From IMG/VR virus record IMGVR_UViG_3300046092_000062, positions 124,001-188,000 of that record: a stretch of DNA of 64,000 bases. One strand, given 5' to 3'. A model generated the notes under the pieces. The model was given only the letters and a program-made list of their open reading frames with translations, was not told where the DNA came from and did no database searches. The position numbers were made by a program, and so were the translations under genes. Below are positions 2,312-63,462 of the stretch, in pieces (position 1 is the stretch's first letter; every line of letters starts with the position of its first letter).

Positions 2312-4612
2312 ATGAGTCAAATAAACGTCACGAAGAGAGACGGCCGTAAAGAGCCACTAAATTTAGAGAAGCTACACAAAGTTGTTTTTTGGGCAACCGA
2401 AGGAATTACAGGAGTTAGTGCAAGCGAAGTAGAAATCAATAGTCATGTACAATTCTACAACGGCATCAAGAGTACAGACATTCAAGAAACGCTTATCAAA
2501 AGCGCAGCAGACTTAATTAGCGAAGAATCACCAAATTACCAATATGTAGCAGGACGCTTGCTTACATATCATATCCATAAGTTAGTTTATGGAGACTTTA
2601 AGCCATGGCCATTGCTACAGTTAGTTAAACGTAACACTGACATCGGCTACTACACAAAAGAATTGTTAGAAAACTATAGCGAAGACGAGATCAATCAAAT
2701 GGACTCGTATATCAAACACGAACGTGATGAAACATTCACCTACGTGGCTATGGAACAATGGCGCGGTAAGTACCTAGTACAAAACCGTGTCACTGGCGAA
2801 ATCTTTGAAACACCACAAATTGCATACATGTTGATTGCTGCCACATTGTTTATGGCCTATCCAAAAGAAACACGTATGCAATGGATTAAGGACTACTATG
2901 ATGCTATCTCTAATTTTGATATCAGTTTGCCTACCCCTATTATGGCCGGTTTACGCACTCCACAGAAGCAGTTCAGCTCGTGCGTTCTTATCGAGTCTGG
3001 CGATAGTCTCGATAGTATCAACGCTACTTCTAGCAGCATTGTTAAGTATGTCTCACAAAAGGCAGGTATTGGAATTGGTGCTGGACGTATCCGTGCGCTT
3101 GGAAGCCCTATTCGCAATGGTGACGCATATCATACAGGCATCACACCTTTCTTAAAGCACTTTCAAACAGCCACTCGCTCATGCAGTCAAGGTGGCGTGC
3201 GTAACGGCGCAGCAACTATCTATTACCCATTGTGGCACCTAGAAGTTGAAGATATGCTTGTTTTGAAGAACAACAAAGGCACAGAGGATAACAGAGTACG
3301 CCAGATGGATTACGGCGTCCAATTCAACAAATTAATGTACGAAAGACTTATTCAAGGTGGCAATATCACCTTGTTTAGCCCCCACGACTTGCCGGAAATG
3401 TACGATGCTTTCTTTAACAACCAAGAGTTGTTTAAAGAGCTGTATGAGAAGGCAGAACGCAATACCAAGATCCGCAAGAAGACTATTCCTGCTGCGGAGT
3501 TGTTTGGTAAGTTCATGCAAGAGCGCAAGGACACTGGTCGTATCTATTTGATGAACGTGGACCATGCTAACACGCATAGCCCATTCAAAGAAGAGTTGCA
3601 CCCTGTTAAGATGAGTAACTTGTGTACTGAGATTAACTTGCCAACTGTGCCATTGATGGACATTAACGACGAAGCAGGTCGTATTGCATTGTGTACTCTT
3701 TCTGCACAGAACTGGGGTAACGTTAGAAAGCCACAAGACTTTGAACGCATGTGTACTCTAAGCGTTCGTGGCCTAGACGCATTGTTAAGCTACCAGAACT
3801 ATCCAGTTAAGGCTGCTGAGATTGCAACTAAAGAATTCCGCCCATTGGGTAACGGTATTATTAACTTTGCCTACTTCTTGGCCAAGCATGATGTATCCTA
3901 TAGCGATCCACGTGCATTGGCACTAGTTGACGAGTACGCAGAAGCATGGTCATACTACTTGATTAAAGCAAGTGCAGACTTGGCTCGAGAACAAGGTGCA
4001 TGTGAGAAGTGGGACGAGTTGAAGTATGCCGACGGTATCCTCCCAATGGACACACGCAAGAAAGAAGTTGACGAACTAGTTGAACATCAAGAGCGTATGC
4101 CTTGGCGTGCTCTACGTGAACAGATTCTAACTACAGGTATCCGCAACGCTACACTAATGGCCTTGATGCCAGCGGAAACTAGCGCACAGATCTCTAATGC
4201 CACTAACGGCATTGAACCACCAAGAAACTATGTTTCTATTAAGCAAAGCAAACACGGAGTACTAAAGCAGGTTGTACCTGAATTCCGCAAACTAAAGAAC
4301 AAATACGAATTGTTATGGGACCAACGTAGCCCAGAAGGCTACCTAAAACTATGTGCAGTATTACAAAAATGGATTGACCAGGGTATTAGCATCAACACTT
4401 CGTACAACCCTAAGTTCTACGAAGATGAAAAGATCCCTATGAGTGAGATGCTCAAGCACTTGCTAATGTGCTACAAATACGGAACTAAACAACTTTACTA
4501 CTTCAACACAAACGATGGACAAGGCGAGATTGATGTCGACAAGCTGGGCGCTACAACGCAATTACCAGAAGGTGACATGGGTCAAGAAGACTGCGATAGC
4601 TGTGTAATTTAA
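2312..4612 (+). CDS. nrdA: ribonucleotide reductase class Ia alpha subunit
   Basis: ATP-cone (VTKRDG), SSC, SNLCTEI catalytic motif, MPAETS, C-terminal CDSC. Confidence 0.98.
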   Translation: MSQINVTKRDGRKEPLNLEKLHKVVFWATEGITGVSASEVEINSHVQFYNGIKSTDIQETLIKSAADLISEESPNYQYVAGRLLTYHIHKLVYGDFKPWPLLQLVKRNTDIGYYTKELLENYSEDEINQMDSYIKHERDETFTYVAMEQWRGKYLVQNRVTGEIFETPQIAYMLIAATLFMAYPKETRMQWIKDYYDAISNFDISLPTPIMAGLRTPQKQFSSCVLIESGDSLDSINATSSSIVKYVSQKAGIGIGAGRIRALGSPIRNGDAYHTGITPFLKHFQTATRSCSQGGVRNGAATIYYPLWHLEVEDMLVLKNNKGTEDNRVRQMDYGVQFNKLMYERLIQGGNITLFSPHDLPEMYDAFFNNQELFKELYEKAERNTKIRKKTIPAAELFGKFMQERKDTGRIYLMNVDHANTHSPFKEELHPVKMSNLCTEINLPTVPLMDINDEAGRIALCTLSAQNWGNVRKPQDFERMCTLSVRGLDALLSYQNYPVKAAEIATKEFRPLGNGIINFAYFLAKHDVSYSDPRALALVDEYAEAWSYYLIKASADLAREQGACEKWDELKYADGILPMDTRKKEVDELVEHQERMPWRALREQILTTGIRNATLMALMPAETSAQISNATNGIEPPRNYVSIKQSKHGVLKQVVPEFRKLKNKYELLWDQRSPEGYLKLCAVLQKWIDQGISINTSYNPKFYEDEKIPMSEMLKHLLMCYKYGTKQLYYFNTNDGQGEIDVDKLGATTQLPEGDMGQEDCDSCVI

Positions 4613-30553: not shown

Positions 30554-31309
30554 ATGCGTAGCACTATACTTATTTTGGCATTACTTGCCAGCAGCATTAG
30601 TTGGGCGAAACCTGCCACAACTATCGACGACACTAGCGACCTTACTGCAAAGTCCTGGCTCATTGCAGACGAACAAAACCAAATCCTAGCCAGTAAAGAC
30701 ACTGGTACCATACGCCCAATGGCCAGCATTACCAAGGTAATGACTGTGCTAACAGTGATGGAAGCAAAACAGGATCTAAATCAATCTATAGCCTACAATC
30801 GAACTCTACGCCTAACTAGGCAAGAGCTTATCAATCTTGCAATAGTCAAAAGCGACAACCATGCAGCAGACCTGCTATGCAGACATTACGTGGGCGGGTA
30901 CGGCAATTGCATCAGCGATATGAATGCTAACGCTATGAAGTACGGTATGCGACATACTAACTATGTTGATGCTACTGGATTGCTAGCAGACAATACCAGC
31001 ACCGCAGAAGATTTGTTACTGTTATTGAACGTAGCAGAGAAGAATTATCTTATTGTGGACTCGGCCACCAAGACCAAAGTGGAAATTAAGAACAAGAAGA
31101 AATGGTTGATCTTTAAACAAACCAATCCCTTAATAGGTCACAAGCACAAGTTCATTGTTAGTAAGACTGGTACCACTAACGCAGCAGGTGGTTGTATCAT
31201 TTTAACAGTTGAAACAGAACGCGGCCTGCGCCGCGTTGTTGTGTTGGGTAGTAAGAACGGTAGAACCCGTATACCTGAAGCTGAGTTTATCTACAAGCAA
31301 GTAGACTAG
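30554..31309 (+). CDS. peptidase S11 D-Ala-D-Ala carboxy/endopeptidase (PBP7-like)
   Basis: Signal peptide; SITK, SDN and KTG motifs. Confidence 0.92.
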   Translation: MRSTILILALLASSISWAKPATTIDDTSDLTAKSWLIADEQNQILASKDTGTIRPMASITKVMTVLTVMEAKQDLNQSIAYNRTLRLTRQELINLAIVKSDNHAADLLCRHYVGGYGNCISDMNANAMKYGMRHTNYVDATGLLADNTSTAEDLLLLLNVAEKNYLIVDSATKTKVEIKNKKKWLIFKQTNPLIGHKHKFIVSKTGTTNAAGGCIILTVETERGLRRVVVLGSKNGRTRIPEAEFIYKQVD

Positions 31310-34085: not shown

Positions 34086-34476
34086 CTTTTGGTTCTGGGC
34101 CAAGCCAGCGTGTGTCACGCATAACTGTGCGTAACTGAAACTTGTTCTTGCCCATCTTAATAAACGGGATATTCAAATTAGTGTGCGGATCATAGAATAC
34201 TAAGTTAGTACCGTCAGGCTTTGCTCTGAACAAATGCAAGCCTCTATTAATGATTCGACCAAATGTGTCAATTAACATACCAGGCTCGATCCTACTCATA
34301 CCACGTTTAGCCAGTAACTGATCAAAGAAATGGTCTTTAATATCTAATCGTATGCCAATATGATTTGCATAGTCTTGCACAGCCTTAATCGATAGGTACA
34401 ACGAGCGAGTGCGCTCTTCTGTGTAATAGGGATCTTGCGGCCAATCGCTATGCTCAAGTAATTCTTTTATTTTCAT
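34072..34476 (-). CDS. late protein with MKIKE leader, putative RNase-like domain
   Basis: HFFDQ...R...I, D..TNLNIPF, RTVMR. Confidence 0.55.
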   Translation of the reverse strand: MKIKELLEHSDWPQDPYYTEERTRSLYLSIKAVQDYANHIGIRLDIKDHFFDQLLAKRGMSRIEPGMLIDTFGRIINRGLHLFRAKPDGTNLVFYDPHTNLNIPFIKMGKNKFQLRTVMRDTRWLGPEPKVTLN

Positions 34477-35171
34477 ATGGTTCCTAGTACGTCGTGATAC
34501 CAAGGGTCAATGATAACTGGCGTACCATCTGCACGTTGCATAACGTTTTCTGTATGCAAGTCCCATCCCCAACCTTTATGTGCGCCTAGTCTAGCTAGAA
34601 TGACCATAGTAATGTACAGGGCTTCGTAGTAGCTTTGCTTACGATGGTCCATGAACTCGTTATGCACTAGTTCCGGAACATCAGGATCGCCGCCCCAGTA
34701 ACGCCAGAGATCACTTTCAGTCATGAAGTCATCTAATACCTCTTGCCATCTGAGTTGACGGGCAGCACACTCACTCATAATCCAAACAATACCTTGTAGC
34801 GCAGTACCAGCTGGAATAGGTTGCAAGCGTTCCATGGCAATTTGTCTAAACTGTTCGCCGTCGATCTCGAAACGTGTATGGTGTTGCCCTTGAATCTTAA
34901 CAAATCTTGGCAAGAATGGATTTGGCTTGCTAGTGGTTACGTATTGATAAAAGTCCAGGAATGTCTTTTCACCTGTACTTAACTGTCCACTCTCTGGCAT
35001 AAGGATTTTAATCACAGTGTGAGCGTCTTTTGCATAGACTGAAGCGTCTGCGCCTGCGCCCAACTCAGTATATCCCGCAGCCTTCATTACTTGCTCAATC
35101 TTGTCACGGTGATCACTAGTGATTAATTCATCAAGTACTTGGGCTTCTGTTAAAATTTCGTTTATTTTCAT
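34473..35171 (-). CDS. Ser/Thr protein kinase-like protein with MKINE leader
   Basis: LGAGADASVY Gly loop, VIKI, MERL, DLHTENVM catalytic loop, IIDP. Confidence 0.8.
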   Translation of the reverse strand: MKINEILTEAQVLDELITSDHRDKIEQVMKAAGYTELGAGADASVYAKDAHTVIKILMPESGQLSTGEKTFLDFYQYVTTSKPNPFLPRFVKIQGQHHTRFEIDGEQFRQIAMERLQPIPAGTALQGIVWIMSECAARQLRWQEVLDDFMTESDLWRYWGGDPDVPELVHNEFMDHRKQSYYEALYITMVILARLGAHKGWGWDLHTENVMQRADGTPVIIDPWYHDVLGTI

Positions 35172-36325
35172 CGCATGTTCATCGCTACAGTGTACTCTTT
35201 GAAGTTGTGCAAGCGATCTTGCAGTCCTCTGAGCGCAGGGTTAATATATTTAGTGACCGTGGCAGTGTCATTGAAGTTGTGTACGTTAGGTCTAACGCGA
35301 GTTTGCCAATACCACACTGCAATCTTGGCAGCAATTTCTGGGTTAGCAGCAAGCTCTGGCTTTTGCTCTAACGGCAACCCTAACGCTTTTCCTGCCATGC
35401 GATAGTTGTCGCGTCCGGTGATTTGAATAAAGCCACGACCGTGATACCTAACTCCGTCCCCTGCATGTGTATTGCCCAAGGTCTTAGCCATACCCGGTGC
35501 AGCCTTGGGGTCGTAACGCTTGTGGAAGTACTTGGCGCCGCCGATCTCCTTCATTCGTGTAAAATCTGCACTTTCGTGACGTGTTTGTGCCATGAATTGT
35601 GCTAGTTCTGCCCCTTTAATGCCTGCTCTGATAGCAGTACGTTGTAGAGTATGCTCGGGCCCCATATTCATACTCACCCCAAATGTGTCTGGTTGTGCTA
35701 CTTTTGGAGTTGCTACTTTAGGTTGTGCAGCTTTGGCTACATGGTGTGCTGTTGCCTTAGGTTGTGCATGTGGCGCAGATTTAGCATCAGCTGCGCCACC
35801 ACCTAACGCCATGCCCGCAGCAAGTGCGCCAGTAGCAGCCCAGTCTTTCCATCCCTCTTCAAGATCTTGTGCAGAATAAATGGCATCTAGTGCATCGTCT
35901 AGCTGTCGCAACGGAATTCCTGCGTTGTTGTATCCGCGTTCCAATCGAGCAATATACGCATCGTTTGGTTCTGTGCCTTGCATGTACTCACGAGTCTCCG
36001 GAGTCATTGTATAGATCTCTGCTTCGTGGCGCTTTCCATTGGCAAATACTGGAACTGTTTTGCGATCGTATAAACTTGGGTAGCCCTCTGTTTGGTCCAG
36101 TTGAGCAAGTAGCTGTCTATCGATTGCCCACAAGCTACCAATTACTCTAGCTCCGGGATATGGAAATACGTTGGCATAAGTGAACATTTCAAACACAAAG
36201 TTCTTTAGCTCTGCACGACTAACAAATTCTGCACCGGGCATCAGTTCTGGGTCTGTTAACATGCCGTAGGCAAAATAGTATATAGGGGCCGCGCCAGCTT
36301 CGTCTAGTACATCTGTGATTTTCAT
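35168..36325 (-). CDS. gamma-glutamylcyclotransferase (AIG2-like) fused to a GH19 lysozyme/chitinase
   Basis: YFAYG, LDQTEGYP..Y (GGCT); FMAQTRHES, YHGRGFIQITGRDNY (GH19). Confidence 0.85.
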   Translation of the reverse strand: MKITDVLDEAGAAPIYYFAYGMLTDPELMPGAEFVSRAELKNFVFEMFTYANVFPYPGARVIGSLWAIDRQLLAQLDQTEGYPSLYDRKTVPVFANGKRHEAEIYTMTPETREYMQGTEPNDAYIARLERGYNNAGIPLRQLDDALDAIYSAQDLEEGWKDWAATGALAAGMALGGGAADAKSAPHAQPKATAHHVAKAAQPKVATPKVAQPDTFGVSMNMGPEHTLQRTAIRAGIKGAELAQFMAQTRHESADFTRMKEIGGAKYFHKRYDPKAAPGMAKTLGNTHAGDGVRYHGRGFIQITGRDNYRMAGKALGLPLEQKPELAANPEIAAKIAVWYWQTRVRPNVHNFNDTATVTKYINPALRGLQDRLHNFKEYTVAMNMR

Positions 36326-36332
36326 ACTGTAT

Positions 36333-37454
36333 TTAGTAAGCCAATATACGGTTTAAGTTCTGCAAGTCTGCAGGGTTGTAGGGAATGTTGCACTCAGTTA
36401 ATGCGCTACCTAGTTTGTCTGTTAACTCGTTTACTACCAGTGGACGCATGGTAGTATAAAAGTGGTTAAAGTTGTATTCTAATATTTCAGCCATTGCTAA
36501 TTTCATTTGCACCAGTTCTTCGTGCGTTTTATTACATAGATCTTCAAGTATAGCTAGCACCGCATCAAAGCGATCGGCACTGTTAGTAATAGTGTCGTAT
36601 CCCTCGTCCCAGAATTCCCCAAAGGTACGAAAGCCATACTTGCGCAAGTACGCCAAATTGCCAGCGCCAGCTAACAACAAAAAGGGCATCTTAGCCACAA
36701 TCGGCTTAAAGATCTTTTCAGTTAGATGTTGTTTATTTTCGTAGAAGATGGTTTCAGTAACTAGATTTACAAATGCCTTTTGCATATCCGCAACATTGAC
36801 CGCTGCACTAAGCTCTCCGCGTGGGTCGCTGGTGTCTATTATCATCTGCTTTTCAAGCAGGTGCATATGAGATCGAATGTTTGTTTTGTGAGGTTCTGGT
36901 AGCCATTGGTACGAGTTAGTAGAAGCCTCAATACTTTTAACATCAGCTGTATTGTAACTCACATATCCTTTCCCTACTAGATCTCTTTTCTGCAATTCGA
37001 TTACCAAGTTGGCGCGGTACAAACGTTTGTCTAATGTTAGATTGTTATAAGTAATATATGTGCGTTCAAAATCGGTATTGACATTTATGTTGTCGTACCA
37101 ATGCAATCTATACCATTCGTGACACAACAGTGCGTGATAAAAATACTGGACATCTTTCAAATTGTAATCATTACACAGTTTGTCGCTTTCTGTGCTATAC
37201 TCACTGGTTACTAGTACCCGACAAGCTGAAAAAGATTGAGAATACGATCTATAGAGTTCAATGTAAAATTTAGTAACGTCTATAGGTTCTTGGTCATAAA
37301 AAATAACAGTAGGTTTAAGTACAATCGGATAAGACGTCGATTTTGAAACAAAGTATATACGATTTTGATTAAACACAGGACACAATAACGCAATGCCCGA
37401 TTTATCAAAAAAGTGATCTCTCATTACATTATAGAAAAAATCAAAAGGAATCAT
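36333..37454 (-). CDS. putative glycosyltransferase-like protein
   Basis: LVTET, TEKIFKPI, GFRTF..FWDE.YD; paralogue of 43074-44165. Confidence 0.55.
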   Translation of the reverse strand: MIPFDFFYNVMRDHFFDKSGIALLCPVFNQNRIYFVSKSTSYPIVLKPTVIFYDQEPIDVTKFYIELYRSYSQSFSACRVLVTSEYSTESDKLCNDYNLKDVQYFYHALLCHEWYRLHWYDNINVNTDFERTYITYNNLTLDKRLYRANLVIELQKRDLVGKGYVSYNTADVKSIEASTNSYQWLPEPHKTNIRSHMHLLEKQMIIDTSDPRGELSAAVNVADMQKAFVNLVTETIFYENKQHLTEKIFKPIVAKMPFLLLAGAGNLAYLRKYGFRTFGEFWDEGYDTITNSADRFDAVLAILEDLCNKTHEELVQMKLAMAEILEYNFNHFYTTMRPLVVNELTDKLGSALTECNIPYNPADLQNLNRILAY

Positions 37455-38693
37455 ATGTTAAGCAAGAAAATTGGATTTATTGGAATTGGCAAGTTAGGGA
37501 TGGCGTGCGCCGAAGTGATGGCCGAAAAGCATTCTGTTACCGGCTATGATATTTACCCCAAAACCAGCAACAAGATCAAAATTGTCAACCAACTTAAAGA
37601 TGCTGTACTCGGTCAAGACATTATTTTTGTTGCAGTACAAACACCACATGATGCTAAGTATGGCGGCGCCAGCCCAATTGCACATTTGCCTAACGTAGAC
37701 TTTAACTACGATGTAGTTGAGCATGTGCTTAAACAGATTAACTGTTGGGCAAGACCAAATCAAATGGTTGTGTTAATTAGCACAGTACTACCAGGAACAG
37801 TGCGTGGACGATTGCGCCAACACATTACTAATCCACGTTTCATTTACAACCCTTACTTAATTGCAATGGGCAGTGTGGAGTGGGATATGGTTAATCCTGA
37901 GATGGTTATCATTGGAACAGAGGACGGCGATGTTACAACTGATGCAGCAGAGCTAATTGAGTTTTATAAAGGACTGATGCAAAACAATCCACGTTACGAA
38001 GTTGGTACATGGGACGAAGCGGAATGTATTAAGGTGTTTTACAACACATTCATTAGTGCCAAGATCGGATTAGCTAACATGATCCAGGACGTTGCTATCA
38101 AGCAAGGCAATATTAATGTGGATGTCGTGACTGATGCACTAGCAAGATCTAGTATGCGAATCATGGGGCCAAAATACATGACAGCAGGAATGGGTGATGC
38201 CGGACCTTGCCACCCACGTGACAACATTGCATTACGTTACATGGCAGAGAAGTTGGATCTAGGGTACGACCTGTTTGATGCTATTATGAATGCACGAGAA
38301 ATTCAAGCACGTAACCTAGCTAAGTTTATCGCTGACGAAGCCAACAATGCGTTGCTGCCAGTTTATATTCACGGCAAAGCATACAAGCCGGACGTGGACT
38401 ACTTAGAAGGCAGCTATAGTTTGCTAGTTGGACATTTTCTAAAACAGGATTTTGGCATCACACCGCACTATGTTGATCCACTAACAGAAGAACTTAATCC
38501 CAAATCTGTTAAGGGCGTTGTGCTACTTGCACACAATAGAAAAATCACATACGGGTATGCGGGCGAAGAGAACGAGCAGGAACTCTACTGCAAACTTAAC
38601 GAAGGTAGTATTGTAGTTGACCCATGGCGTCAATACGCTACTGCTCGCACCGACATCAAGGTCATCCACTATGGCAATACACGCAAAGTATAA
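37455..38693 (+). CDS. ugd: UDP-glucose/GDP-mannose 6-dehydrogenase
   Basis: GIGKLG, AVQTP, STVLPG, AE.IK..YN, GPCHPRD. Confidence 0.9.
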   Translation: MLSKKIGFIGIGKLGMACAEVMAEKHSVTGYDIYPKTSNKIKIVNQLKDAVLGQDIIFVAVQTPHDAKYGGASPIAHLPNVDFNYDVVEHVLKQINCWARPNQMVVLISTVLPGTVRGRLRQHITNPRFIYNPYLIAMGSVEWDMVNPEMVIIGTEDGDVTTDAAELIEFYKGLMQNNPRYEVGTWDEAECIKVFYNTFISAKIGLANMIQDVAIKQGNINVDVVTDALARSSMRIMGPKYMTAGMGDAGPCHPRDNIALRYMAEKLDLGYDLFDAIMNAREIQARNLAKFIADEANNALLPVYIHGKAYKPDVDYLEGSYSLLVGHFLKQDFGITPHYVDPLTEELNPKSVKGVVLLAHNRKITYGYAGEENEQELYCKLNEGSIVVDPWRQYATARTDIKVIHYGNTRKV

Positions 38694-39183
38694 GATCCCT
38701 AAGTTTTGGGGCATTGAATACAAGCTCTTAGATTATGTAACTGAAGAGTTCAATGACCCTGAGAGCTTGCGTATCTGGCGCCACCAAGGATACCCGGGAC
38801 CATTCACTGGCGCCATGTGTGACATGCGCAGTCCTCAGCCTAGCTGGAATGATAAGTTCATTGAGATATATCAAGAGATGGGATGGAAGGACATTGGCAC
38901 CAGTTACTACCGCATGGATACTGGAACAGTCTTACCAACTCACTCTGATTTGTATGCGAAGTATGTTAAACTACACAACTTGCAAGGTCAGGAGCAACGT
39001 ATCCGTAGAGCAGTAGTGTTCTTAGAAGATTGGAAGCCCGGGCACTACAGTGAAATCAATGGCATGGGCCTTGTTCACTGGGATGCAGGAACAGTGCTAG
39101 AGTGGGATTATGATACCCCGCACGCCGCGGCCAATATTGGAATTGAGTCGCGTTACACACTTCAAATAACAGGTTGGGTATGA
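38671..39183 (+). CDS. 2OG-Fe(II) dioxygenase-like (cupin) protein
   Basis: PTHSD (HxD), distal H (PHAAAN), RYTLQIT. Confidence 0.75.
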   Translation: MAIHAKYKIPKFWGIEYKLLDYVTEEFNDPESLRIWRHQGYPGPFTGAMCDMRSPQPSWNDKFIEIYQEMGWKDIGTSYYRMDTGTVLPTHSDLYAKYVKLHNLQGQEQRIRRAVVFLEDWKPGHYSEINGMGLVHWDAGTVLEWDYDTPHAAANIGIESRYTLQITGWV

Positions 39184-40097
39184 TATCAAGTTGGAATGAA
39201 TACGATCCGTTAAAGCGTATTATTGTTGGTGATGCAACACATGCGAATTGGCCAGTATATGATAAGGTCTTTCGCGCAGAAGAACAAAATACCTTGTGGA
39301 AAGAAACTCCACTCCCATCTGGTCCAGTACCACAGTGGATCATTGATGAAACTAATCGTGACCTGCAACGTCTTTGCACCATTCTTACTGTACACGGCGT
39401 AGAAGTGGAGCGCCCAACTACAATGAATTTCCAAGTGCATGATGGCCTGTACAATTACTGTCCCCGAGATCGTTTCATTGTGCATGGCGGTATTATTATC
39501 AACCCTGCAATGATGTATCCTTGCAGAGATATGGAATATCAATGCTACATGGATTTTCTTGACGAAGCAGAACACATTATTCACATGCCACGTGATAAGG
39601 GCATGGTGCTGGATGCAGCAAACATTCTACGTATTGCTAAAGACAAGTGGTTGTTCTTAGAATCGGCCAGCGGCAATCGCGCTGCATACGATTGGCTATG
39701 CAAACAAGTGCCAGACGTTGAAATTGAACTGTGTAACTTCTACGCTGGTGTGCATATTGATTCAACCATTGTTGCATTAAATGAAAATACCTTTATTGTT
39801 AACGGCAGCAGAGTAACCAATGACACGCTGCCTAAGATGTTGCGAGACAAAGAACTGATCTTCGTTAACGATGTTGTGGCGCAAGAGTTCCACGAGTATC
39901 CGTATGCTAGCAAGTGGATTGCGCTTAACATGCTGAGTATCAATCCCACTACTGTCATCGTTGACGCTGCACAAGACCTACTAATTAAAACCTTAGAGGC
40001 ATTAAAGTTCACAGTTATTCCGTTGACCCTACGCCATAGCCGCACTCTCGGCGGAGGCTTCCACTGTGTAACGCTCGATTTAGTTCGTTCGATATAA
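39180..40097 (+). CDS. amidinotransferase (glycine/inosamine-phosphate AT family)
   Basis: SWNEYDPL, CPRD, DAAN, HIDS, GGFHCVTLD. Confidence 0.9.
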   Translation: MISSWNEYDPLKRIIVGDATHANWPVYDKVFRAEEQNTLWKETPLPSGPVPQWIIDETNRDLQRLCTILTVHGVEVERPTTMNFQVHDGLYNYCPRDRFIVHGGIIINPAMMYPCRDMEYQCYMDFLDEAEHIIHMPRDKGMVLDAANILRIAKDKWLFLESASGNRAAYDWLCKQVPDVEIELCNFYAGVHIDSTIVALNENTFIVNGSRVTNDTLPKMLRDKELIFVNDVVAQEFHEYPYASKWIALNMLSINPTTVIVDAAQDLLIKTLEALKFTVIPLTLRHSRTLGGGFHCVTLDLVRSI

Positions 40098-40119
40098 ATA
40101 CTTGATAATAAGAACAACT

Positions 40120-40881
40120 ATGACCGATTTTTCTAGATATTCAGATGCACTGCTTTCAGCACTTAAACACTCAAGCAAAGAGCAAGAGATTGTAACAAAG
40201 AAGCAAGAAATTTTAGATGGCATCTATGGATTTCACAACTTTGTGCCAAATACAACTTTATTCGTTGGGTTCAATCCCGCATTGCTTTCTGCCAAGAACG
40301 GCGACGTTTCTGTCACCTGTATTAGCCAAGCCGCAAGGGATTACTTAGACAGCAAGAACGTCAAGTACACATACGTATCAGAATCTGAAACTGTTGGTAA
40401 GAAGTTTGACGTTGTGGTTGCAATGGAAGAATTCTTTACGTTTGCTGATAACGAGTTAGATCAGCAAAATGTTGTTAAACAGATTTGTAACCTAGCCAGT
40501 GAATTTGTGGTAAGTACTTTACGTGATTATAAGAATCAAGACTTTAAAGATCGTGAGTTCAGTATCCCAGCTGTGATTCGAAATGGCAAGACCAACTGCG
40601 TTTACAATGAGTTCCATGACTGGGACTTTGCAAACCGTAGCGCATGGACCACTACTGTATACGAAATTTCAAATCCAGCACACGAACTAACCACTTACGG
40701 ACCGTTTAATAGACGTACTATGTACTTCAAACAGTTGGCTAAGTTTAGTATGGATGCAGGTGCAGGTGATTTCATTGTGCATAAAAACCTCATGTATAAG
40801 TCATTGATTAAGAAAAATTATGAACACGTTATCAGCATAAGATTTGAAGATCAATGGAACTATCAAAATTCGACTCGTTAG
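40120..40881 (+). CDS. degenerate methyltransferase-fold protein
   Basis: TLFVG...FDVVVA pattern; late promoter at 40093. Confidence 0.45.
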   Translation: MTDFSRYSDALLSALKHSSKEQEIVTKKQEILDGIYGFHNFVPNTTLFVGFNPALLSAKNGDVSVTCISQAARDYLDSKNVKYTYVSESETVGKKFDVVVAMEEFFTFADNELDQQNVVKQICNLASEFVVSTLRDYKNQDFKDREFSIPAVIRNGKTNCVYNEFHDWDFANRSAWTTTVYEISNPAHELTTYGPFNRRTMYFKQLAKFSMDAGAGDFIVHKNLMYKSLIKKNYEHVISIRFEDQWNYQNSTR

Positions 40882-42071
40882 TAGCTAACATATTAGAAGA
40901 CGTACAAACAAAGGTTGGTAATCAAATTACTGACCTTGTTAAAGATGAGCTTAGAGCTCGACTAGACACGTATAATTACGATCTAGCTGTACACAAATTA
41001 AACCAAGTACTTGACCCCACTGACACCGAAGCGTTGCAGAAACGTATTAACTCGGCTGTTAACGCGGTCGTAAATAACATCCAGGCGCAGCTAGAAGCAG
41101 AGATTGCAGACCTTGTTTATAAGAAACTCAAGGACCTTGACGTTAATCGACAATTTAACCAAACACTAGCGACCGCAGTTAAGGACAAGATCTTTAATCT
41201 TGACTTTCCCGAAGGCAGTGTTAGTGCAGCAAGTATCAAGCAGTCAGACTTGGCTATTTCGGGTGATCAAGTTGCAGGCGGTATTATTAGAAACTTTGCA
41301 TCCACTGGCATTGACGACCAATCAACTAATTGTGTTGTCACTATTCTCGATGCTGCGGTAGTTGTTGAAAACAATCTGGTAACAATGGATTTAACTGTTG
41401 AGGGCGATCTCAACGTAAAAGGCAAAGTAGACGAGGACAGTGCGTTCTACAAACAGTTAGCTAACTCAGTTACTAATGCAGTCCAGCAAGGCCTAGATAG
41501 TGAATTATTTGCAGGGTTCAGCGACACTATTTTTAGCAAAATCAAAACAGATGGTCTAGACTTATCCAAGATTACAGTCAATGAAAATGTAGTAATCGAA
41601 GGCAATCGCATTGGATACACTATTACCGAAAGTAACTTGCAGAAGCTGGGTATGCTAAAGGAATTGCAAGTAGCAGGCGAAACTCAACTTTCAGACACGT
41701 TATACGTGGGTAACAAACGTACTGGCATTAACACTCTAGAACCTAGTGCAGCATTGGCGGTATGGGACGAAGATATTGAAATTACTGTTAGCAAAGAACG
41801 TAACGGTCAGGGCCGAATTGGCACACCCAGAAACCAATCACTTGTTTTAGGCAGCAACCAGCACAGCAACATTGTGCTTAACACAGATGGGTCGGCTCAA
41901 ATCAATGATCTGCGTATGGGTAATGTAAAGATGTCTGCTAGCGACACACCGCCTAATTTCTCTAGCACCAAAGGACATATTGTGTTTAATGCCAACCCTA
42001 GCGCAGGCGGCCCATTGGGTTGGGTTTGCTTAGGTGCTGCAAATTGGGCAAATTTTGGCATAGTTGACTGA
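40854..42071 (+). CDS. probable virion/fibre protein
   Basis: Coiled N-terminus; SNLQKLG.L; C-terminal GHIVFN.NP..G.PLGWVC. Confidence 0.6.
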   Translation: MELSKFDSLVANILEDVQTKVGNQITDLVKDELRARLDTYNYDLAVHKLNQVLDPTDTEALQKRINSAVNAVVNNIQAQLEAEIADLVYKKLKDLDVNRQFNQTLATAVKDKIFNLDFPEGSVSAASIKQSDLAISGDQVAGGIIRNFASTGIDDQSTNCVVTILDAAVVVENNLVTMDLTVEGDLNVKGKVDEDSAFYKQLANSVTNAVQQGLDSELFAGFSDTIFSKIKTDGLDLSKITVNENVVIEGNRIGYTITESNLQKLGMLKELQVAGETQLSDTLYVGNKRTGINTLEPSAALAVWDEDIEITVSKERNGQGRIGTPRNQSLVLGSNQHSNIVLNTDGSAQINDLRMGNVKMSASDTPPNFSSTKGHIVFNANPSAGGPLGWVCLGAANWANFGIVD

Positions 42072-42097
42072 TAATGGGTCACATGCTATAATACAGC

Positions 42098-43105
42098 ATG
42101 ACTACACCACGAATTGGGTTTGCCTGTAAGTTTAGTGAACTTACCCCTAAAGGCATTGAAAGTGTTCCGGAATTAAATACACGCGGCACTACTGTGGCGT
42201 GGCTAAATAGACAGAGCAAGCATATTGCAGAGGAACGTCTCTGGGATATCATGAAGCACAACATCGAATCGGCAAAACTGCTGGTAGAAAAAGTAGGAAC
42301 CCTTGAACAACATCTCAGAATGGTGCGCCTTAGCAGCGACCTTCTTCCTGTATATACCGAGCCTTCTTGGAGTTATTTTTGGCGTCAGCCTGACGTTAGG
42401 GCTTATTGCGAAAAACACTTTGCGCAGGTTGGCGCTGTTGCTCGTTGCAGCAATGTGCGTCTTAGTTTTCACCCAGGTCAATTCTGCGTTCTCGCAAGCG
42501 ATTCTGGAGATGTTGTTGAACGCTCAATCCTTGAGTTCGAATACCATGCTGATATGACCCGTTGGATGGGCTATGGACAAAAATTTCAAGACTTCAAAAT
42601 CAACGTACACATATCGGGACGCAAGGGTCCGCAGGGCATTAGAGATGTATATGGCCGTCTATCGCCTGAAGCACGTAACTGTCTAACACTAGAGAACGAG
42701 GAATACACACATGGTTTGGACGATTGTTTGTCTTTACACGATCTTGTACCTACTGTGCTCGATATTCATCATCACTGGATCCGAGAAGGTGAGTACATTG
42801 ATGCGGGCAGCGATCGTGTTAAGGCAGTTGTTGATAGCTGGCGCGGCGTGCGCCCTACTTTACACTACAGTGTTTCACGAGAAGATGTCCTTGTCGGGCA
42901 CTGTGCGAACACCTTGCCCGATCACCCAGCGTTGCTTGTAAGCGGTTACAAAAAGCAAAAACTTCGTGCTCACAGTGACTACTACTGGAACAATGCAGTT
43001 AACGAGTGGGCTGCTACGTTTACTAAAGACTTTGATGTCATGTGCGAGAGCAAGGCCAAGAACCTTGCTAGCATTAAGTTCGCGACAGTAGCTCTTCAAT
43101 CTTAG
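42098..43105 (+). CDS. uvsE: UV damage endonuclease
   Basis: RIGFAC, RLSSD, HPGQF, LENEE, DIHHH, RAHSD, ESKAK; promoter 42064-42092. Confidence 0.93.
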   Translation: MTTPRIGFACKFSELTPKGIESVPELNTRGTTVAWLNRQSKHIAEERLWDIMKHNIESAKLLVEKVGTLEQHLRMVRLSSDLLPVYTEPSWSYFWRQPDVRAYCEKHFAQVGAVARCSNVRLSFHPGQFCVLASDSGDVVERSILEFEYHADMTRWMGYGQKFQDFKINVHISGRKGPQGIRDVYGRLSPEARNCLTLENEEYTHGLDDCLSLHDLVPTVLDIHHHWIREGEYIDAGSDRVKAVVDSWRGVRPTLHYSVSREDVLVGHCANTLPDHPALLVSGYKKQKLRAHSDYYWNNAVNEWAATFTKDFDVMCESKAKNLASIKFATVALQS

Positions 43106-44165
43106 ATTCTAAACCGCGCACAAGAGACAAGTGCCAATCGGTTGACATCATAATGTTAAAGTTATGTTCAACGATTGGCCTTGCCTTTTGTAGTATTAGA
43201 TTCTGGTCTTGCTTGCTTAACCAACTCATCTGTTCACATGCTGCGGCCCAACGTTGTTGATCATCAGCAATAGAGTCGTAGCTTTCATCTATAACGGAAC
43301 CAAACGTTCGAAATCCCAACTTGCGTAAATTGCGTAGGTAGTGCTGGCCAGCAAACATAATAAACAAGCGTCTAGCAATAATGGGCTTGGCAGTCTTCTC
43401 AGTGTAGAAACTGTATCTATTATCGTAGTTGGTTTCTGCCACTACAGTGTAAGCAGTGCGGTTGTAAATATCAATGGGTATAACTTGACTGATACTCATT
43501 GCGTGGCCGTAGTACTTAACAAAGTCTACAGTCCATTTAGGATCGTTGATAAACTGCATACCACGATCCTCCCATATCCATTGTTCGCTACCCGTAGCAA
43601 AATCTACCTGGTGCTCGTTAAAGTAAGTGAGCACACGATTTTCTTGCCTTAGGTTTGCTTTTACAAATTGGTAAACAGCATCTCGGTGAGGCTTCTTTCG
43701 GCCTAGTAGGATATCAAAGTGCGATTCCTTACTGTGAACGTAATTGATTCTTCCTAGCAGCTCAGGCAAGTAATCACGATAAAAATAACGACTGGTTTCA
43801 AACCAATCGAAGTATTGATGAACAGTTGCATGTTCCAACGGTTGCTCAACGAACCCGCAAAGGTAGTAGGCAATGTTGGGACGATCGTTCTTTAGTATAA
43901 ACTCTAAGGTACTAGCATGTAGCTCAGAGCCTATAACAAAAACAAAATCGCTGATTTCGTACACTGAATCTAACTTGGCTTGAGTGTCAGATTTGAATGG
44001 ATAGGGTAGGTGAATAAACGCGATGTTCAGTGGATGCCCACTGTTTAAATAGTGACCTAGATCATCGTAAACTGCCCATTCGTTTGGAGTGAGCTTTTCA
44101 AAATGATCTAGGTGGTACCTAACCGTGTCGGAATTATCGCGAAAAACTCCGACGTTGAGAAACAT
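43074..44165 (-). CDS. putative glycosyltransferase-like protein
   Basis: VVAET, TEKTAKPI, GFRTF...IDESYD. Confidence 0.55.
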   Translation of the reverse strand: MFLNVGVFRDNSDTVRYHLDHFEKLTPNEWAVYDDLGHYLNSGHPLNIAFIHLPYPFKSDTQAKLDSVYEISDFVFVIGSELHASTLEFILKNDRPNIAYYLCGFVEQPLEHATVHQYFDWFETSRYFYRDYLPELLGRINYVHSKESHFDILLGRKKPHRDAVYQFVKANLRQENRVLTYFNEHQVDFATGSEQWIWEDRGMQFINDPKWTVDFVKYYGHAMSISQVIPIDIYNRTAYTVVAETNYDNRYSFYTEKTAKPIIARRLFIMFAGQHYLRNLRKLGFRTFGSVIDESYDSIADDQQRWAAACEQMSWLSKQDQNLILQKARPIVEHNFNIMMSTDWHLSLVRGLESKIEELLSRT

Positions 44166-62058: not shown

Positions 62059-63462
62059 ATGAAACTCTCTAAAAACATCATTCTCAACACCGACAGCTAC
62101 AAAGTGTCAATGGGCCGCCAATACCCAGCTGGCACTACCAATGTATTCAGCTACATTGCAGCACGTGGTGGTAAATTCACATTCACGCAGTTTGTTGGAC
62201 TGCAAATGTTCATCAAGGAGTATTTGCTTGAACAAATCACCAAAGAAGACATCGACATTGCAGAAGAAATCCTCACAGCGCACGGCGAGCCATTTGACCG
62301 CAGCATGTGGGACTACATTGTCGAAGCACACAACGGCTACTTGCCAGTGGTCATTAAAGCCGTACCAGAAGGCACTGTTGTGCCAGTTGGCAACGCATTA
62401 GTCACAATCGAAAACACTGACCCCAAGTGCCACGGTTTAACTACTTGGTTGGAAACTCCATTGCTTCGCGCAGTGTGGTACCCAACTACAGTCTCAACAC
62501 AAAGCAAGTACATTAAAAACATCTTGCAAGAATACTTGGAGAAATCAGGTGATCCTGCTTCTATCGGTTTTAAACTGCACGATTTTGGTGCTCGTGGTGT
62601 ATCTTCAATGGAGAGTGCTGGTATTGGGGGTGCAGCCCACTTGGTCAACTTCATGGGCACGGACACTATTACTGGTGTTCTTTACGCTCGTGAATATTAC
62701 AATGCTGGTATTGCTGGATTTAGCATTCCTGCAGCCGAACACAGTACTATCACTAGTTGGGGTCGCGCAGGCGAACTGAACGCTTACAGCAACATGGTTA
62801 CACAGTTTGGCAAGCCAGGCGGCATTGTTGCAGTTGTGTCTGACAGCTATAACATCTACGAAGCATGTAAAATGTGGAGCACTGGTGCGCTGAAACAGCA
62901 AGTGATTGATTCAGGTGCCACAGTTGTTATCCGTCCTGACTCAGGTGATCCTGTTGACGTGATGCCAAAGATGATTGCAATTCTTGCAGAAGGTTTTGGT
63001 TACACTACAAACGACAAGGGCTACAAAGTTCTCAACAATGTGCGTATGATCTGGGGTGATGGTATTAACCCATTGTCAATCCAAAGCATCTTGCGCACAA
63101 TGGTTGACGTGGGTGGTTGGAGTGCAGACAACTTTGCGTTTGGTATGGGCGGTGCTTTGTTGCAAGCAATTGATCGTGATACACAAAAATGGGCTATGAA
63201 ATGCTCAAGTGCATGTATCGATGGTGAATGGGTTGATGTTTACAAAGACCCAATCACTGACAGCGGCAAAGCTTCACTCAAAGGTCGTGTCAAGTTGTGG
63301 ACCAACAGTGGTGGCGAGTTTGCGACAAGTGTGCAAGCCCCTACTGGTTGGAGCGACAAGGGCATCGGTGGTTGGGTTGATGCAATGAAAACTGTCTACA
63401 TGGATGGTGCATTGTTTAACGAAATCACCTTTGAAGAAGTTCGTGCTAACAGCATGAAATAA
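62059..63462 (+). CDS. nadV: nicotinamide phosphoribosyltransferase (NAMPT)
   Basis: TDSYK, LHDFGARG, PAAEHS, VSDSY, RPDSGDP, GDG, FGMGG.L. Confidence 0.96.
   Translation: MKLSKNIILNTDSYKVSMGRQYPAGTTNVFSYIAARGGKFTFTQFVGLQMFIKEYLLEQITKEDIDIAEEILTAHGEPFDRSMWDYIVEAHNGYLPVVIKAVPEGTVVPVGNALVTIENTDPKCHGLTTWLETPLLRAVWYPTTVSTQSKYIKNILQEYLEKSGDPASIGFKLHDFGARGVSSMESAGIGGAAHLVNFMGTDTITGVLYAREYYNAGIAGFSIPAAEHSTITSWGRAGELNAYSNMVTQFGKPGGIVAVVSDSYNIYEACKMWSTGALKQQVIDSGATVVIRPDSGDPVDVMPKMIAILAEGFGYTTNDKGYKVLNNVRMIWGDGINPLSIQSILRTMVDVGGWSADNFAFGMGGALLQAIDRDTQKWAMKCSSACIDGEWVDVYKDPITDSGKASLKGRVKLWTNSGGEFATSVQAPTGWSDKGIGGWVDAMKTVYMDGALFNEITFEEVRANSMK

What the first reader, a model, noticed from the sequence alone, without database searches (positions are those of the whole stretch)
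36333..44165. Sugar-modification cluster containing an amidinotransferase
Seen: Ugd, a 2OG-Fe(II) oxygenase and an amidinotransferase overlap in one operon, followed by a methyltransferase-like ORF and a fibre-like protein. Two paralogous GT-like genes on the minus strand bracket the region. Known: this amidinotransferase family makes guanidino groups in creatine and streptidine biosynthesis. Inference: synthesis of an unusual guanidinylated/hydroxylated uronic-acid glycan for virion proteins, DNA or the host surface.
Basis: partly seen in the sequence, partly recalled or inferred. Interest (0 to 1): 0.65.

Follow-up and report, generated by a model that had tools for sequence, protein, structure and literature searches.

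The report
Phage guanidino-sugar tailoring gene module
A 320-kb freshwater phage carries a StrB1-type amidinotransferase translationally coupled to a new small 2-oxoglutarate oxygenase and a divergent sugar dehydrogenase; the same gene set recurs, reshuffled, in a second viral clade, so these phages probably build a guanidino-bearing sugar that has not yet been chemically identified.

Summary
The gene calls are largely right. Ugd-like dehydrogenase (37455-38693), a 170-aa 2OG-Fe(II) oxygenase (38671-39183) and a StrB1/AGAT-type amidinotransferase (39180-40097) overlap in one + strand operon. Two paralogous GT-B-fold genes on the minus strand flank the region. The methyltransferase call has only weak support. 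The "fibre-like" call has none.

New evidence:
- Ugd-2OG-AT occurs in 83 of 84 related phage loci, with an ATGA stop/start overlap in 64.
- A second viral clade includes cyanophage S-SCSM2R. Its AT is only 33-36% identical, yet it carries the same families in other orders: short DegT, AT, 2OG, GT-like, Ugd, carbamoyltransferase.
- The 2OG domain occurs naturally fused to the GT-like family and to a DegT aminotransferase.
- Bacterial homologues of the AT lack these neighbours.

Most likely this is a virus-specific nucleotide-sugar tailoring pathway that yields a guanidino amino/uronic sugar. The product and its acceptor (virion protein, host envelope or DNA) are unresolved. The 2OG and GT-like families have no Pfam model. 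The GT-like family is absent from 50,697 deposited phage genomes, and the 2OG family occurs in only one.

The parts
36333..37454 (-). GT-like A: orphan GT-B-fold glycosyltransferase-like protein (373 aa). Its start codon abuts the Ugd start codon head-to-head (CATATG).
   Evidence: No Pfam, PHROG or NCBIfam hit. AF2 pLDDT 90. All Foldseek hits are GT-B. VIA Z 10.8-11.2 T4 BGT, 10.3 T4 AGT, 10.1-10.4 H. pylori FucT. 911 relatives, all unnamed. Present divergently upstream of Ugd in 71/84 related loci.
37455..38693 (+). Ugd-like nucleotide-sugar 6-dehydrogenase (412 aa), a divergent aquatic-myovirus clade.
   Evidence: Pfam N-terminal and central domains; phrog_9148 E 1.5e-90. TIGR03026 scores 131 bits, below its cut-off of 189.8. 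Lys/Asn/Cys/Asp align with human K220/N224/C276/D280, but NPEFLxEG is replaced by NPYLIAxG. Present in 83/84 related loci.
38671..39183 (+). Small 2OG-Fe(II) oxygenase (170 aa) of a family without a Pfam model.
   Evidence: AF2 pLDDT 96. VIA Z 14.6 (3dkq), 14.3 PiuC, 13.6 P. putida P4H, about 13 PHD2/SnoN, about 12 AlkB/ABH3. H91, D93, H151 and R161 are nearly invariant in 65 sequences. 508 clusters at 50% identity. Fusions to GT-like and DegT.
39180..40097 (+). StrB1/AGAT-family amidinotransferase (305 aa). Its start overlaps the 2OG stop codon (ATGA).
   Evidence: PDB 1bwd E 8.7e-50, AGAT 5e-27, HsvA 2.6e-23, SxtG 3.5e-19. D99, D147, H194, D196 and C298 are invariant across phage homologues. 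The ATGA overlap occurs in 64/84 loci.
40120..40881 (+). Class-I SAM methyltransferase-like ORF (253 aa). Accessory: present in 16/84 related loci.
   Evidence: Atlas features 0.93 with 177-184 shared features. No Pfam, PHROG or PDB hit. Tally.
40854..42071 (+). 405-aa acidic protein of unknown function. Accessory: present in 26/84 loci.
   Evidence: No hit in Pfam, PHROGs, PDB or deposited phages, and no paralogue in the genome. A contig from an RNA library spans MT plus this ORF.
42098..43105 (+). UvdE UV-damage endonuclease. It is a conserved downstream neighbour and probably not part of the sugar pathway.
   Evidence: Pfam UvdE 2.6e-34; phrog_8420 1.9e-77; TIGR00629 9.5e-31. Present downstream in 73/84 loci. 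Absent from the second-clade loci.
43074..44165 (-). GT-like B (363 aa), a paralogue of GT-like A. It co-varies with the MT/405-aa insert.
   Evidence: 28% identity, E 4e-16 to GT-like A over the C-terminal half. Present in 13/16 loci with MT against 3/68 without. Four paralogues in the genome.

Best explanation
The core is a virus-specific nucleotide-sugar tailoring module.

Shown:
- A catalytically intact StrB1/AGAT-type amidinotransferase.
- A 2OG-Fe(II) oxygenase translationally coupled to it.
- A Ugd-like dehydrogenase.
- Orphan GT-B enzymes.
- Elsewhere in the same 320-kb genome: two SDR dehydratase/epimerase genes each next to a DegT aminotransferase (one full-length, one short), a carbamoyltransferase and two further GT-like paralogues.

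Inferred pathway:
1. A UDP-hexose is oxidised by the Ugd-like and SDR enzymes.
2. It is aminated by a DegT-type enzyme.
3. The amine receives an amidino group from L-arginine through the Cys298 thio-uronium intermediate typical of the family. This gives a guanidino sugar, analogous to the action of StrB1 on inosamine phosphate.
4. The 2OG oxygenase, carbamoyltransferase and methyltransferase-like protein add further decoration.
5. The GT-B proteins transfer the sugar to an acceptor that remains unknown. A virion or host-envelope component is the likeliest.
For: AT identity and catalytic residues.
2OG identity.
Operon coupling: the 4-nt ATGA overlap in the window and in 64/84 related loci; Ugd-2OG-AT in 83/84 loci.
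Second viral AT clade (33-36% identity; a separate clade in the tree): the same families in different orders. Counts are short DegT 17/22, 2OG 19/22, GT-like 18/22, Ugd 15/22, carbamoyltransferase 7/22.
S-SCSM2R has short DegT ... GT, 2OG-AT, GT2.
Rosetta-stone fusions: 2OG+GT-like (P0253), GT-like+2OG+GT-like (P0255), DegT+2OG (P0389).
Distant 2OG members sit next to SDR and Ugd-like genes.
The genome encodes the missing steps: SDR+DegT twice, a carbamoyltransferase and GT-like paralogue C.
The closest solved relative of the AT is the one that amidinates a phosphorylated amino-cyclitol, not glycine.
Bacterial homologues lack all these neighbours.
Contigs from RNA libraries of close relatives cover Ugd, the 2OG/AT junction, AT and MT+405-aa ORF.
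Against: - No biochemical data exist for any member.
- In the window genome the aminotransferases and the carbamoyltransferase lie 100-140 kb away, so their participation is inferred from other lineages.
- The Ugd-like enzyme lacks both Glu of NPEFLxEG. Its product may not be a uronic acid.
- Bacterial relatives of the AT work in small-molecule contexts: NRPS-like, AsnB-like, GlmS-like and Lys-2,3-aminomutase neighbours.
- The P4H/PHD-like fold of the 2OG enzyme, and its fusion to GTs, fit equally well an enzyme that hydroxylates the acceptor macromolecule.
- Many loci in each clade are close relatives, so the counts overstate independence.
- The RNA-library contigs cannot exclude DNA carry-over.
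Confidence: 0.5

Rival explanations
1. Acceptor-hydroxylation model, like PLOD3/LH3, Mimivirus L230 or Skp1-P4H. The 2OG oxygenase hydroxylates a Pro or Lys of a virion or host protein. The GT-B paralogues glycosylate that hydroxyl. The Ugd-like enzyme and the AT tailor the donor sugar, or the AT converts a Lys or Hyl amine into a guanidine.
For: The best structural matches of the 2OG model include prolyl hydroxylases that act on proteins: P. putida P4H/EF-Tu Z 13.6, PHD2 about 13, algal P4H 13.1, PBCV-1 collagen P4H 12.1. 2OG is fused to one or two GT-like domains in one polypeptide. The accessory 405-aa ORF is inserted in the operon and co-varies with GT-like B and MT. In S-SCSM2R another amidinotransferase and a prolyl dihydroxylase were found in the virion proteome (PMC12801897).
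Against: The DegT-2OG fusion and the SDR/Ugd-2OG adjacency point to a sugar-nucleotide substrate. No Pro-, Lys- or collagen-like target was identified. The Z-scores of protein, small-molecule and nucleic-acid oxygenases are within about 2 of each other.
Confidence: 0.2
2. DNA hypermodification, base-J-like. The 2OG oxygenase oxidises a base in phage DNA. The BGT/AGT-like GT-B proteins glycosylate it. The sugar, or an aminoalkyl side chain, is amidinated. This would protect the DNA from host nucleases.
For: In an unbiased scan of 48,161 chains, the two best structural matches of GT-like A are the T4 DNA beta- and alpha-glucosyltransferases (Z 10.8, 10.3). AlkB/ABH3 are among the matches of the 2OG model (Z about 12). 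A DNA-repair endonuclease, UvdE, follows the operon in 73/84 loci.
Against: The Z-scores are tied within 1 with FucT, GlgM and POGLUT. The genome has only one canonical ThyA (357 bits), no C5-DNA methyltransferase, no TGT/DpdA and no QueC, so no known route to hmC, hmU or deazaguanine acceptors. The GT-like proteins are acidic (pI 5.5-6.0). UvdE is not linked to the module in the second clade.
Confidence: 0.12
3. Free small-molecule product. The AT makes guanidinoacetate, homoarginine, agmatine-like compounds or an aminocyclitol/antibiotic-like metabolite ('antibiotic synthesis genes'), and the sugar genes are unrelated neighbours.
For: Bacterial homologues lie in small-molecule clusters. The S-SCSM2R authors propose antibiotic synthesis (PMC12801897). 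AGAT-type chemistry is the textbook role of the family.
Against: Linkage to 2OG, GT-like, DegT and Ugd is retained across two deep viral clades despite rearrangement. The fusions tie 2OG to GT and DegT. The bacterial small-molecule neighbours are absent from the phage loci.
Confidence: 0.12
4. There is no functional module. The adjacency is inherited synteny within one phage lineage.
For: The 84 loci of the window lineage are 60-97% identical in the AT and share flanking genes.
Against: The same families recur with different order and orientation in a clade whose AT is only 33-36% identical. Gene fusions exist. The ATGA coupling is conserved.
Confidence: 0.05

Closest known systems
StrB1, scyllo-inosamine-4-phosphate amidinotransferase of streptomycin biosynthesis (PDB 1bwd); also AGAT, HsvA, SxtG
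   Same: Full-length homology (E 8.7e-50). The Asp-His-Cys triad and both guanidinium-binding Asp positions are conserved. The presumed mechanism is the same: a covalent amidino-Cys intermediate formed from L-arginine.
   Different: The window clade lacks about 30 residues present in StrB1 (query 131-141 against StrB1 140-173). It is encoded by viruses, coupled to a 2OG oxygenase and GT-B genes rather than to inositol or aminocyclitol genes, and its acceptor is unknown. No Pfam hit at E<=0.01.
Arn pathway (Ugd-ArnA-ArnB) and WbpA/B/E-type pathways that make amino and amidino uronic sugars for LPS
   Same: The enzyme classes match: a Ugd-family dehydrogenase, SDR, DegT aminotransferase and transferases. 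The phage DegT matches WbpE, QdtB and ArnB at 1e-32 to 1e-47.
   Different: The known pathways use no amidinotransferase of the StrB1 type. Acetamidino groups there come from amidotransferases (own knowledge). The phage genes are dispersed in three clusters, and no Wzx/Wzy/undecaprenyl machinery was seen in the window.
Hydroxylase-glycosyltransferase fusions (human PLOD3/LH3, Mimivirus L230) and the JBP/JGT base-J system
   Same: A 2OG oxygenase is physically or genetically joined to glycosyltransferases.
   Different: There is no sequence relation. The GT domains here are an orphan GT-B family, and the substrate is unknown. The comparison rests on my own knowledge of those systems and was not tested.
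Sugar-gene clusters of aquatic T4-like myoviruses (Synechococcus phage Bellamy gp219-228, Pelagibacter phage HTVC008M gp156-164)
   Same: A homologous Ugd-like gene (58% and 50% identity, with the same NPYLIAxG variant) sits next to carbamoyltransferase, methyltransferase and GT genes.
   Different: Those clusters have NadE-like genes but no AT, no 2OG of this family and no GT-like family member.
Synechococcus phage S-SCSM2R ORF305-310, annotated 'antibiotic synthesis genes'
   Same: It is the only deposited phage with this 2OG family, and the gene lies directly upstream of an AT (36% identity), with a short DegT and GTs nearby.
   Different: It is a T4-like cyanomyovirus, marine, with no Ugd in that cluster. 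Its function has not been tested (PMC12801897).

Membership tests
Amidinotransferase (AGAT/StrB1 family, pentein/GME superfamily) | Significant full-length similarity to characterised amidinotransferases rather than to the hydrolases of the superfamily | tested here: met
   1bwd 8.7e-50, AGAT 5e-27, HsvA 2.6e-23, SxtG 3.5e-19. The only hydrolase signal is DDAH at E 0.007.
Amidinotransferase (AGAT/StrB1 family, pentein/GME superfamily) | Catalytic Cys-His-Asp triad (StrB1 C332/H227/D179) | tested here: met
   C298, H194 and D147 align, and they are invariant in window-clade, S-SCSM2R and CP220 homologues.
Amidinotransferase (AGAT/StrB1 family, pentein/GME superfamily) | Arg-dependent amidino transfer to an amine acceptor | not testable with these tools
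   Needs an enzyme assay.
Amidinotransferase (AGAT/StrB1 family, pentein/GME superfamily) | Match to the Pfam or NCBIfam family model above its cut-off | tested here: not met
   No Pfam family at E<=0.01. NCBIfam gives only DDAH at 15.6 bits against a cut-off of 300.
2OG-Fe(II) oxygenase superfamily | Double-stranded beta-helix fold | tested here: met
   Model pLDDT 96. Z 14.6-12 over 135-155 residues to many 2OG oxygenases.
2OG-Fe(II) oxygenase superfamily | HxD/E...H iron triad and a basic residue that binds the 2OG C5 carboxylate | tested here: met
   H91, D93, H151 and R161 (R-Y-T) are conserved in at least 90% of 65 family members. The assignment of R161 to 2OG binding is by motif position and was not modelled with ligand.
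UDP-glucose/GDP-mannose dehydrogenase family | NAD-binding and central domains; catalytic Cys with the Lys/Asn/Asp partners | tested here: met
   Pfam PF03721 and PF00984. K193, N197, C252 and D256 align with human K220, N224, C276 and D280, and they are invariant in 5 phage homologues.
UDP-glucose/GDP-mannose dehydrogenase family | Conserved NPEFLxEG motif with two Glu (thioester-hydrolysis/water-activating role, from own knowledge) | tested here: not met
   NPYLIAMG in the window and NPYLIAxG in Bellamy, HTVC008M, L006 and L008, against NPEFLAEG/NPEFLREG in the solved Ugds.
UDP-glucose/GDP-mannose dehydrogenase family | C-terminal UDP-binding domain; NCBIfam NDP-sugar dehydrogenase cut-off | tested here: inconclusive
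   PF03720 E 0.0022, 18.8 bits against a cut-off of 30. TIGR03026 131 bits against 189.8.
GT-B glycosyltransferases | Two Rossmann-like domains with an interdomain cleft | tested here: met
   Model pLDDT 90. In the unbiased scan all 29 matches with Z>=8 are GT-B-fold glycosyltransferases.
GT-B glycosyltransferases | Membership of a classified sequence family (Pfam/CAZy) or sugar-nucleotide binding | tested here: not met
   No Pfam hit for any of 44 members. No PDB hit with a profile at E<=10. The nearest named Atlas cluster, GT10, scores only 0.80. Binding was not tested.
T4-type DNA glucosyltransferases (BGT/AGT) | A hydroxymethylated base in phage DNA as acceptor (needs a dCMP/dUMP hydroxymethylase, or 5mC plus TET) | tested here: not met
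   One canonical ThyA, no C5 methyltransferase, no TGT, no QueC in the 320-kb record, which is 92% complete. The fold match is a tie.
Class I SAM methyltransferase (ORF 40120-40881) | Rossmann-like MTase fold with a Gly-rich SAM motif | tested here: inconclusive
   Atlas features 0.93 with 177-184 shared features. No Pfam, PHROG or PDB match. Weak TIGR02021 at 0.019.
Phage tail fibre (ORF 40854-42071) | Similarity to any fibre, spike or structural family | tested here: not met
   No hits in Pfam, PHROGs, PDB or 50,697 phage records. Not folded.
UvdE UV-damage endonuclease (ORF 42098-43105) | Match to the family model above its cut-off | tested here: met
   PF03851 119 bits against a cut-off of 24; phrog_8420 1.9e-77.

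The most novel reading that the evidence does not exclude
Aquatic phages use a virus-specific pathway to install a guanidinium-bearing, further decorated sugar on a macromolecule: a virion protein, the host envelope or DNA. The pathway comprises a StrB1-type amidinotransferase, a new minimal 2OG oxygenase, a short DegT, a Glu-less Ugd-like dehydrogenase, a carbamoyltransferase and an unclassified GT-B family that is often fused to the oxygenase. A cationic guanidino glycan has not been described for any virus.
Probability: 0.35. Interest if true: 0.8.

Novelty: new variant of a known kind. Interest (0 to 1): 0.62.

Why it matters
If the product is a guanidino sugar attached to virions, the host surface or DNA, it would add a new chemical class to phage glycobiology and to phage-host surface or defence interactions. 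It would also give functions to two large orphan viral families: the 2OG family (about 500 clusters at 50% identity) and the GT-B family (about 900 relatives). A third consequence is a new acceptor class for StrB1-type amidinotransferases, which would be useful for enzymatic guanidinylation of sugars. The module is common in freshwater metagenomes: 24 sequencing runs from 19 studies hold all or part of this stretch, and over 550 viral contigs hold an AT relative. One cultured phage, S-SCSM2R, carries the module, so the question can be tested directly.

Tried and rejected
- Pfam, PHROGs and NCBIfam gave nothing for the 2OG ORF, either GT-like ORF, the MT-like ORF or the 405-aa ORF.
- Profile and sequence searches of the PDB gave nothing for the GT-like family, the MT-like ORF, the 405-aa ORF or the short DegT.
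- CP220 gp085 and HTVC008M gp163, the small ORFs in equivalent positions, are not homologous to the window 2OG.
- The 307-aa ORF next to the DegT-2OG fusion in L095 is not an AT.
- A 7-deazaguanine DNA modification was rejected: no TGT/DpdA and no QueC.
- An hmC/5mC-TET route was rejected: a single canonical ThyA and no C5 methyltransferase.
- Bacterial homologue contexts were examined for a shared pathway; none is shared with the phage.
- The promoter/terminator scan was at shuffle level overall. Its best site (42064-42092, 11/12 with an extended -10) precedes UvdE and is only a consensus match.
- The literature searches found no functional study of a phage amidinotransferase or of this cluster.
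It was not run, so no claim of binding is made.
- The careful tree search did not finish. The quick tree was used, and it leaves the relation of the two viral clades to the bacterial clade unresolved.
- No alternative genetic code was needed.

Full report
**Context.** The window is bases 124001-188000 of a 320,767-bp IMG/VR virus record, which CheckV rates 92% complete. Elsewhere the window carries NrdA, a ClpX-like ATPase, a tail-spike-like protein and NAMPT. The stretch and its close relatives occur in freshwater metagenomes: 24 runs from 19 studies. The GC content is even at about 0.40-0.46 across the region.

**Check of the observation.**
- The + strand operon is real. Ugd-like spans 37455-38693. 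I prefer this ATG, which follows AAGGA, to the listed GTG at 37413, because relatives are 412 aa.
- The 2OG ORF spans 38671-39183 and overlaps Ugd by 23 nt.
- The AT spans 39180-40097. Its ATG overlaps the 2OG TGA as ATGA.
- Ugd-like is supported by Pfam and phrog_9148 at 1.5e-90.
- The AT has no Pfam hit, but it matches StrB1 (1bwd) at 8.7e-50, AGAT at about 1e-26, HsvA and SxtG. D147/H194/C298 sit on the catalytic triad and D99/D196 on the two further conserved Asp positions.
- The 170-aa ORF has no family hit. It folds with pLDDT 96 into a DSBH, with Z 14.6-12 to PiuC, P. putida P4H, PHD2, SnoN, PolD and AlkB/ABH3. Its family conserves H91-x-D93, H151 and R161-Y-T.
- The two flanking minus-strand genes are paralogues (E 4e-16). 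The model (pLDDT 90) has a GT-B fold. Two more paralogues lie elsewhere in the genome.
- The MT-like call rests on language-model features only.
- The 405-aa 'fibre-like' ORF matched nothing.

**Conservation in the window lineage.** I compared 84 related loci with AT identity of 60-97%.
- Ugd-2OG-AT is present in 83.
- GT-like A lies divergently upstream in 71.
- UvdE lies downstream in 73.
- The MT-like ORF is present in 16 and the 405-aa ORF in 26.
- GT-like B accompanies MT in 13 of 16 loci, against 3 of 68 without MT.
- The ATGA stop/start overlap of 2OG and AT is kept in 64 of 84.

The constant core is therefore GT-like A | Ugd-2OG-AT, and MT / 405-aa ORF / GT-like B form an accessory insert.

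**Evidence beyond inherited synteny.**
1. The 2OG family is large: 508 clusters at 50% identity and 2,895 proteins at 90%. It contains natural fusions.
   - P0253 is 2OG plus GT-like (E 8e-20 to GT-like A).
   - P0255 is GT-like, 2OG, GT-like.
   - P0389 is a DegT aminotransferase plus 2OG, followed by an SDR gene.
   - A distant 2OG member follows an SDR and a Ugd-like gene.
2. The contig that carries P0255 has short DegT - AT (35% identity) - GT-2OG-GT - carbamoyltransferase.
3. A search with that AT gave 22 further viral loci with the same families in varying order and orientation. Counts are short DegT 17/22, 2OG 19/22, GT-like 18/22, Ugd 15/22 and carbamoyltransferase 7/22. Several of these loci are truncated or near-duplicates.
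4. In a quick ML tree, these sequences plus cyanophage S-SCSM2R form one clade (SH-aLRT 86). The window lineage forms another (99), and 25 bacterial homologues form a third (89). The branching order of the three is unresolved, and CP220 sits on a very long branch.
5. The bacterial homologues (33-39% identity) have none of the phage partner genes. Their neighbours are instead NRPS-like, AsnB-like, GlmS-like/kinase, or Lys-2,3-aminomutase/ATP-grasp genes.
6. Among 50,697 deposited phage genomes, the GT-like family and the 405-aa ORF have no match. The 2OG family occurs only in S-SCSM2R, directly upstream of its AT.

**The rest of the genome supplies plausible missing steps.**
- G000 295.4-304.3 kb holds an SDR, a full DegT, a GNAT-like gene, GT-like paralogue C and a carbamoyltransferase. 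They lie beside ThyA and DHFR. The best PDB matches of this DegT are an entry named glutamine-scyllo-inositol transaminase (2.5e-50), then QdtB, DesV, WbpE and ArnB.
- G000 266-270 kb holds a GT1-like gene, a 4,6-dehydratase-like SDR, the short DegT and GTP cyclohydrolase I.

**Mechanism.** The following are shown: the enzyme classes, intact catalytic residues, translational coupling, the fusions and the recurrent gene set. The following is inferred. An NDP-hexose is oxidised, aminated and then amidinated from arginine, as StrB1 does on inosamine phosphate. It is further modified by the 2OG oxygenase, the carbamoyltransferase and the MT-like protein, and the GT-B proteins transfer it.

The fusions of 2OG to both a DegT and GTs are most simply read as consecutive steps on a sugar nucleotide. 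The P4H-like fold also allows a model in which 2OG hydroxylates the acceptor protein, as in LH3/L230.

DNA as acceptor is suggested only by the tied top fold matches to T4 BGT/AGT and by the UvdE neighbour. It is weakened by the absence of any route to hydroxymethyl, methyl or deazaguanine bases, and by the acidic GT-like proteins.

**A caveat on 'uronic acid'.** The Ugd-like enzyme keeps Lys, Asn, Cys and Asp. However, it and its relatives in Bellamy and HTVC008M replace the NPEFLxEG motif with NPYLIAxG. From my own knowledge, the first Glu of that motif assists thioester hydrolysis in UGDH, so the product of this clade may differ.

**Expression.** Contigs from three freshwater metatranscriptome libraries (two studies), 90-99% identical to the window, cover parts of the operon.
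- Covered: parts of Ugd, the 2OG/AT junction (38814-39317), the AT, and MT plus the 405-aa ORF (40125-42008).
- Not covered: GT-like A.
- These contigs cannot prove transcription or a single transcript.

**Literature.** CP220-type Campylobacter phages were annotated with a 'possible glycine amidinotransferase' (PMC2853527 appears in the list but was not read). The S-SCSM2R authors call ORF305/306/309 'antibiotic synthesis genes' without testing them (PMC12801897). Sullivan et al. list cyanophage carbamoyltransferases and 2OG oxygenases as sporadic genes of unknown role (PMC3037559). I found no study of this module.

**Verdict.**
- The individual enzymes are new members of known superfamilies.
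- Their recurrent, fused and virus-restricted combination around an amidinotransferase is a new variant of phage sugar-tailoring clusters, with a potentially new product.
- The product and its target remain open.

Noticed in passing
window 37455-38693; L001:7623-8861; L002:7635-8780: The Ugd-like proteins of this phage, Synechococcus phage Bellamy and Pelagibacter phage HTVC008M all carry NPYLIAxG where solved Ugds have NPEFLxEG. Both conserved Glu are lost while the catalytic Cys, Lys, Asn and Asp are kept. The clade may release a different product.
   Followed up: partly
window 37452-37457: GT-like A and Ugd start head-to-head with no intergenic base (CATATG). Both promoters must therefore lie inside the neighbouring coding sequence.
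   Followed up: no
window 35168-36325 (-): A fusion of a gamma-glutamyl-cyclotransferase-like (GGACT/AIG2) domain with a GH19 chitinase-like lysozyme domain. It matches endolysin PHROGs. This is an unusual endolysin architecture.
   Followed up: no
window 34473-35171 (-): A protein-kinase-like ORF: phrog_15752 at 1.8e-7 and a weak Kinase-PolyVal hit. It lies beside the endolysin.
   Followed up: no
window 42064-42092: A near-consensus sigma-70-like promoter (TTGACT, 17-nt spacer, TG, TATAAT; 11/12) ends 6 nt before the UvdE start codon. UvdE may be transcribed separately, with almost no leader.
   Followed up: no
window 30554-31309: A D-Ala-D-Ala carboxypeptidase (Peptidase_S11, 3.8e-32) encoded by the phage.
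   Followed up: no
G000:C1 295400-304400 and 266000-270000 (L104, L105): Two further sugar-gene clusters in the same genome. The first has SDR, DegT, GNAT-like, an 815-aa ORF, GT-like paralogue C and a carbamoyltransferase, next to ThyA/DHFR and a Bax1-I family protein. The second has GT1-like, SDR, short DegT and GTP cyclohydrolase I, followed by a Rieske protein.
   Followed up: partly
L108, L109, L110, L111, L112: The phage block GT-like/Ugd/2OG/AT/UvdE (AT 59-71% identical) sits on contigs binned into MAGs named Haliscomenobacter, Terrimicrobiaceae, Bacteroidetes UBA11400 and Legionella. These are probably mis-binned phage contigs and not reliable host evidence.
   Followed up: partly
L006:2076-2300; L006, L008, L009: Relatives of this jumbo phage encode ribosomal protein S21, HSP20, ClpS, a ClpX-like ATPase and ClpP near the module.
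   Followed up: no
L005 (Campylobacter phage CP220, record positions 70690-79273): In CP220 the distant AT homologue (25% identity) is embedded among five radical-SAM genes and followed by two GT-A-like genes and a PAP2 phosphatase. This is a different partner set from the aquatic phages.
   Followed up: no
window 62059-63462 and 2312-4612: Nicotinamide phosphoribosyltransferase (phrog_448, 1.3e-156) and the class I ribonucleotide reductase large subunit.
   Followed up: no
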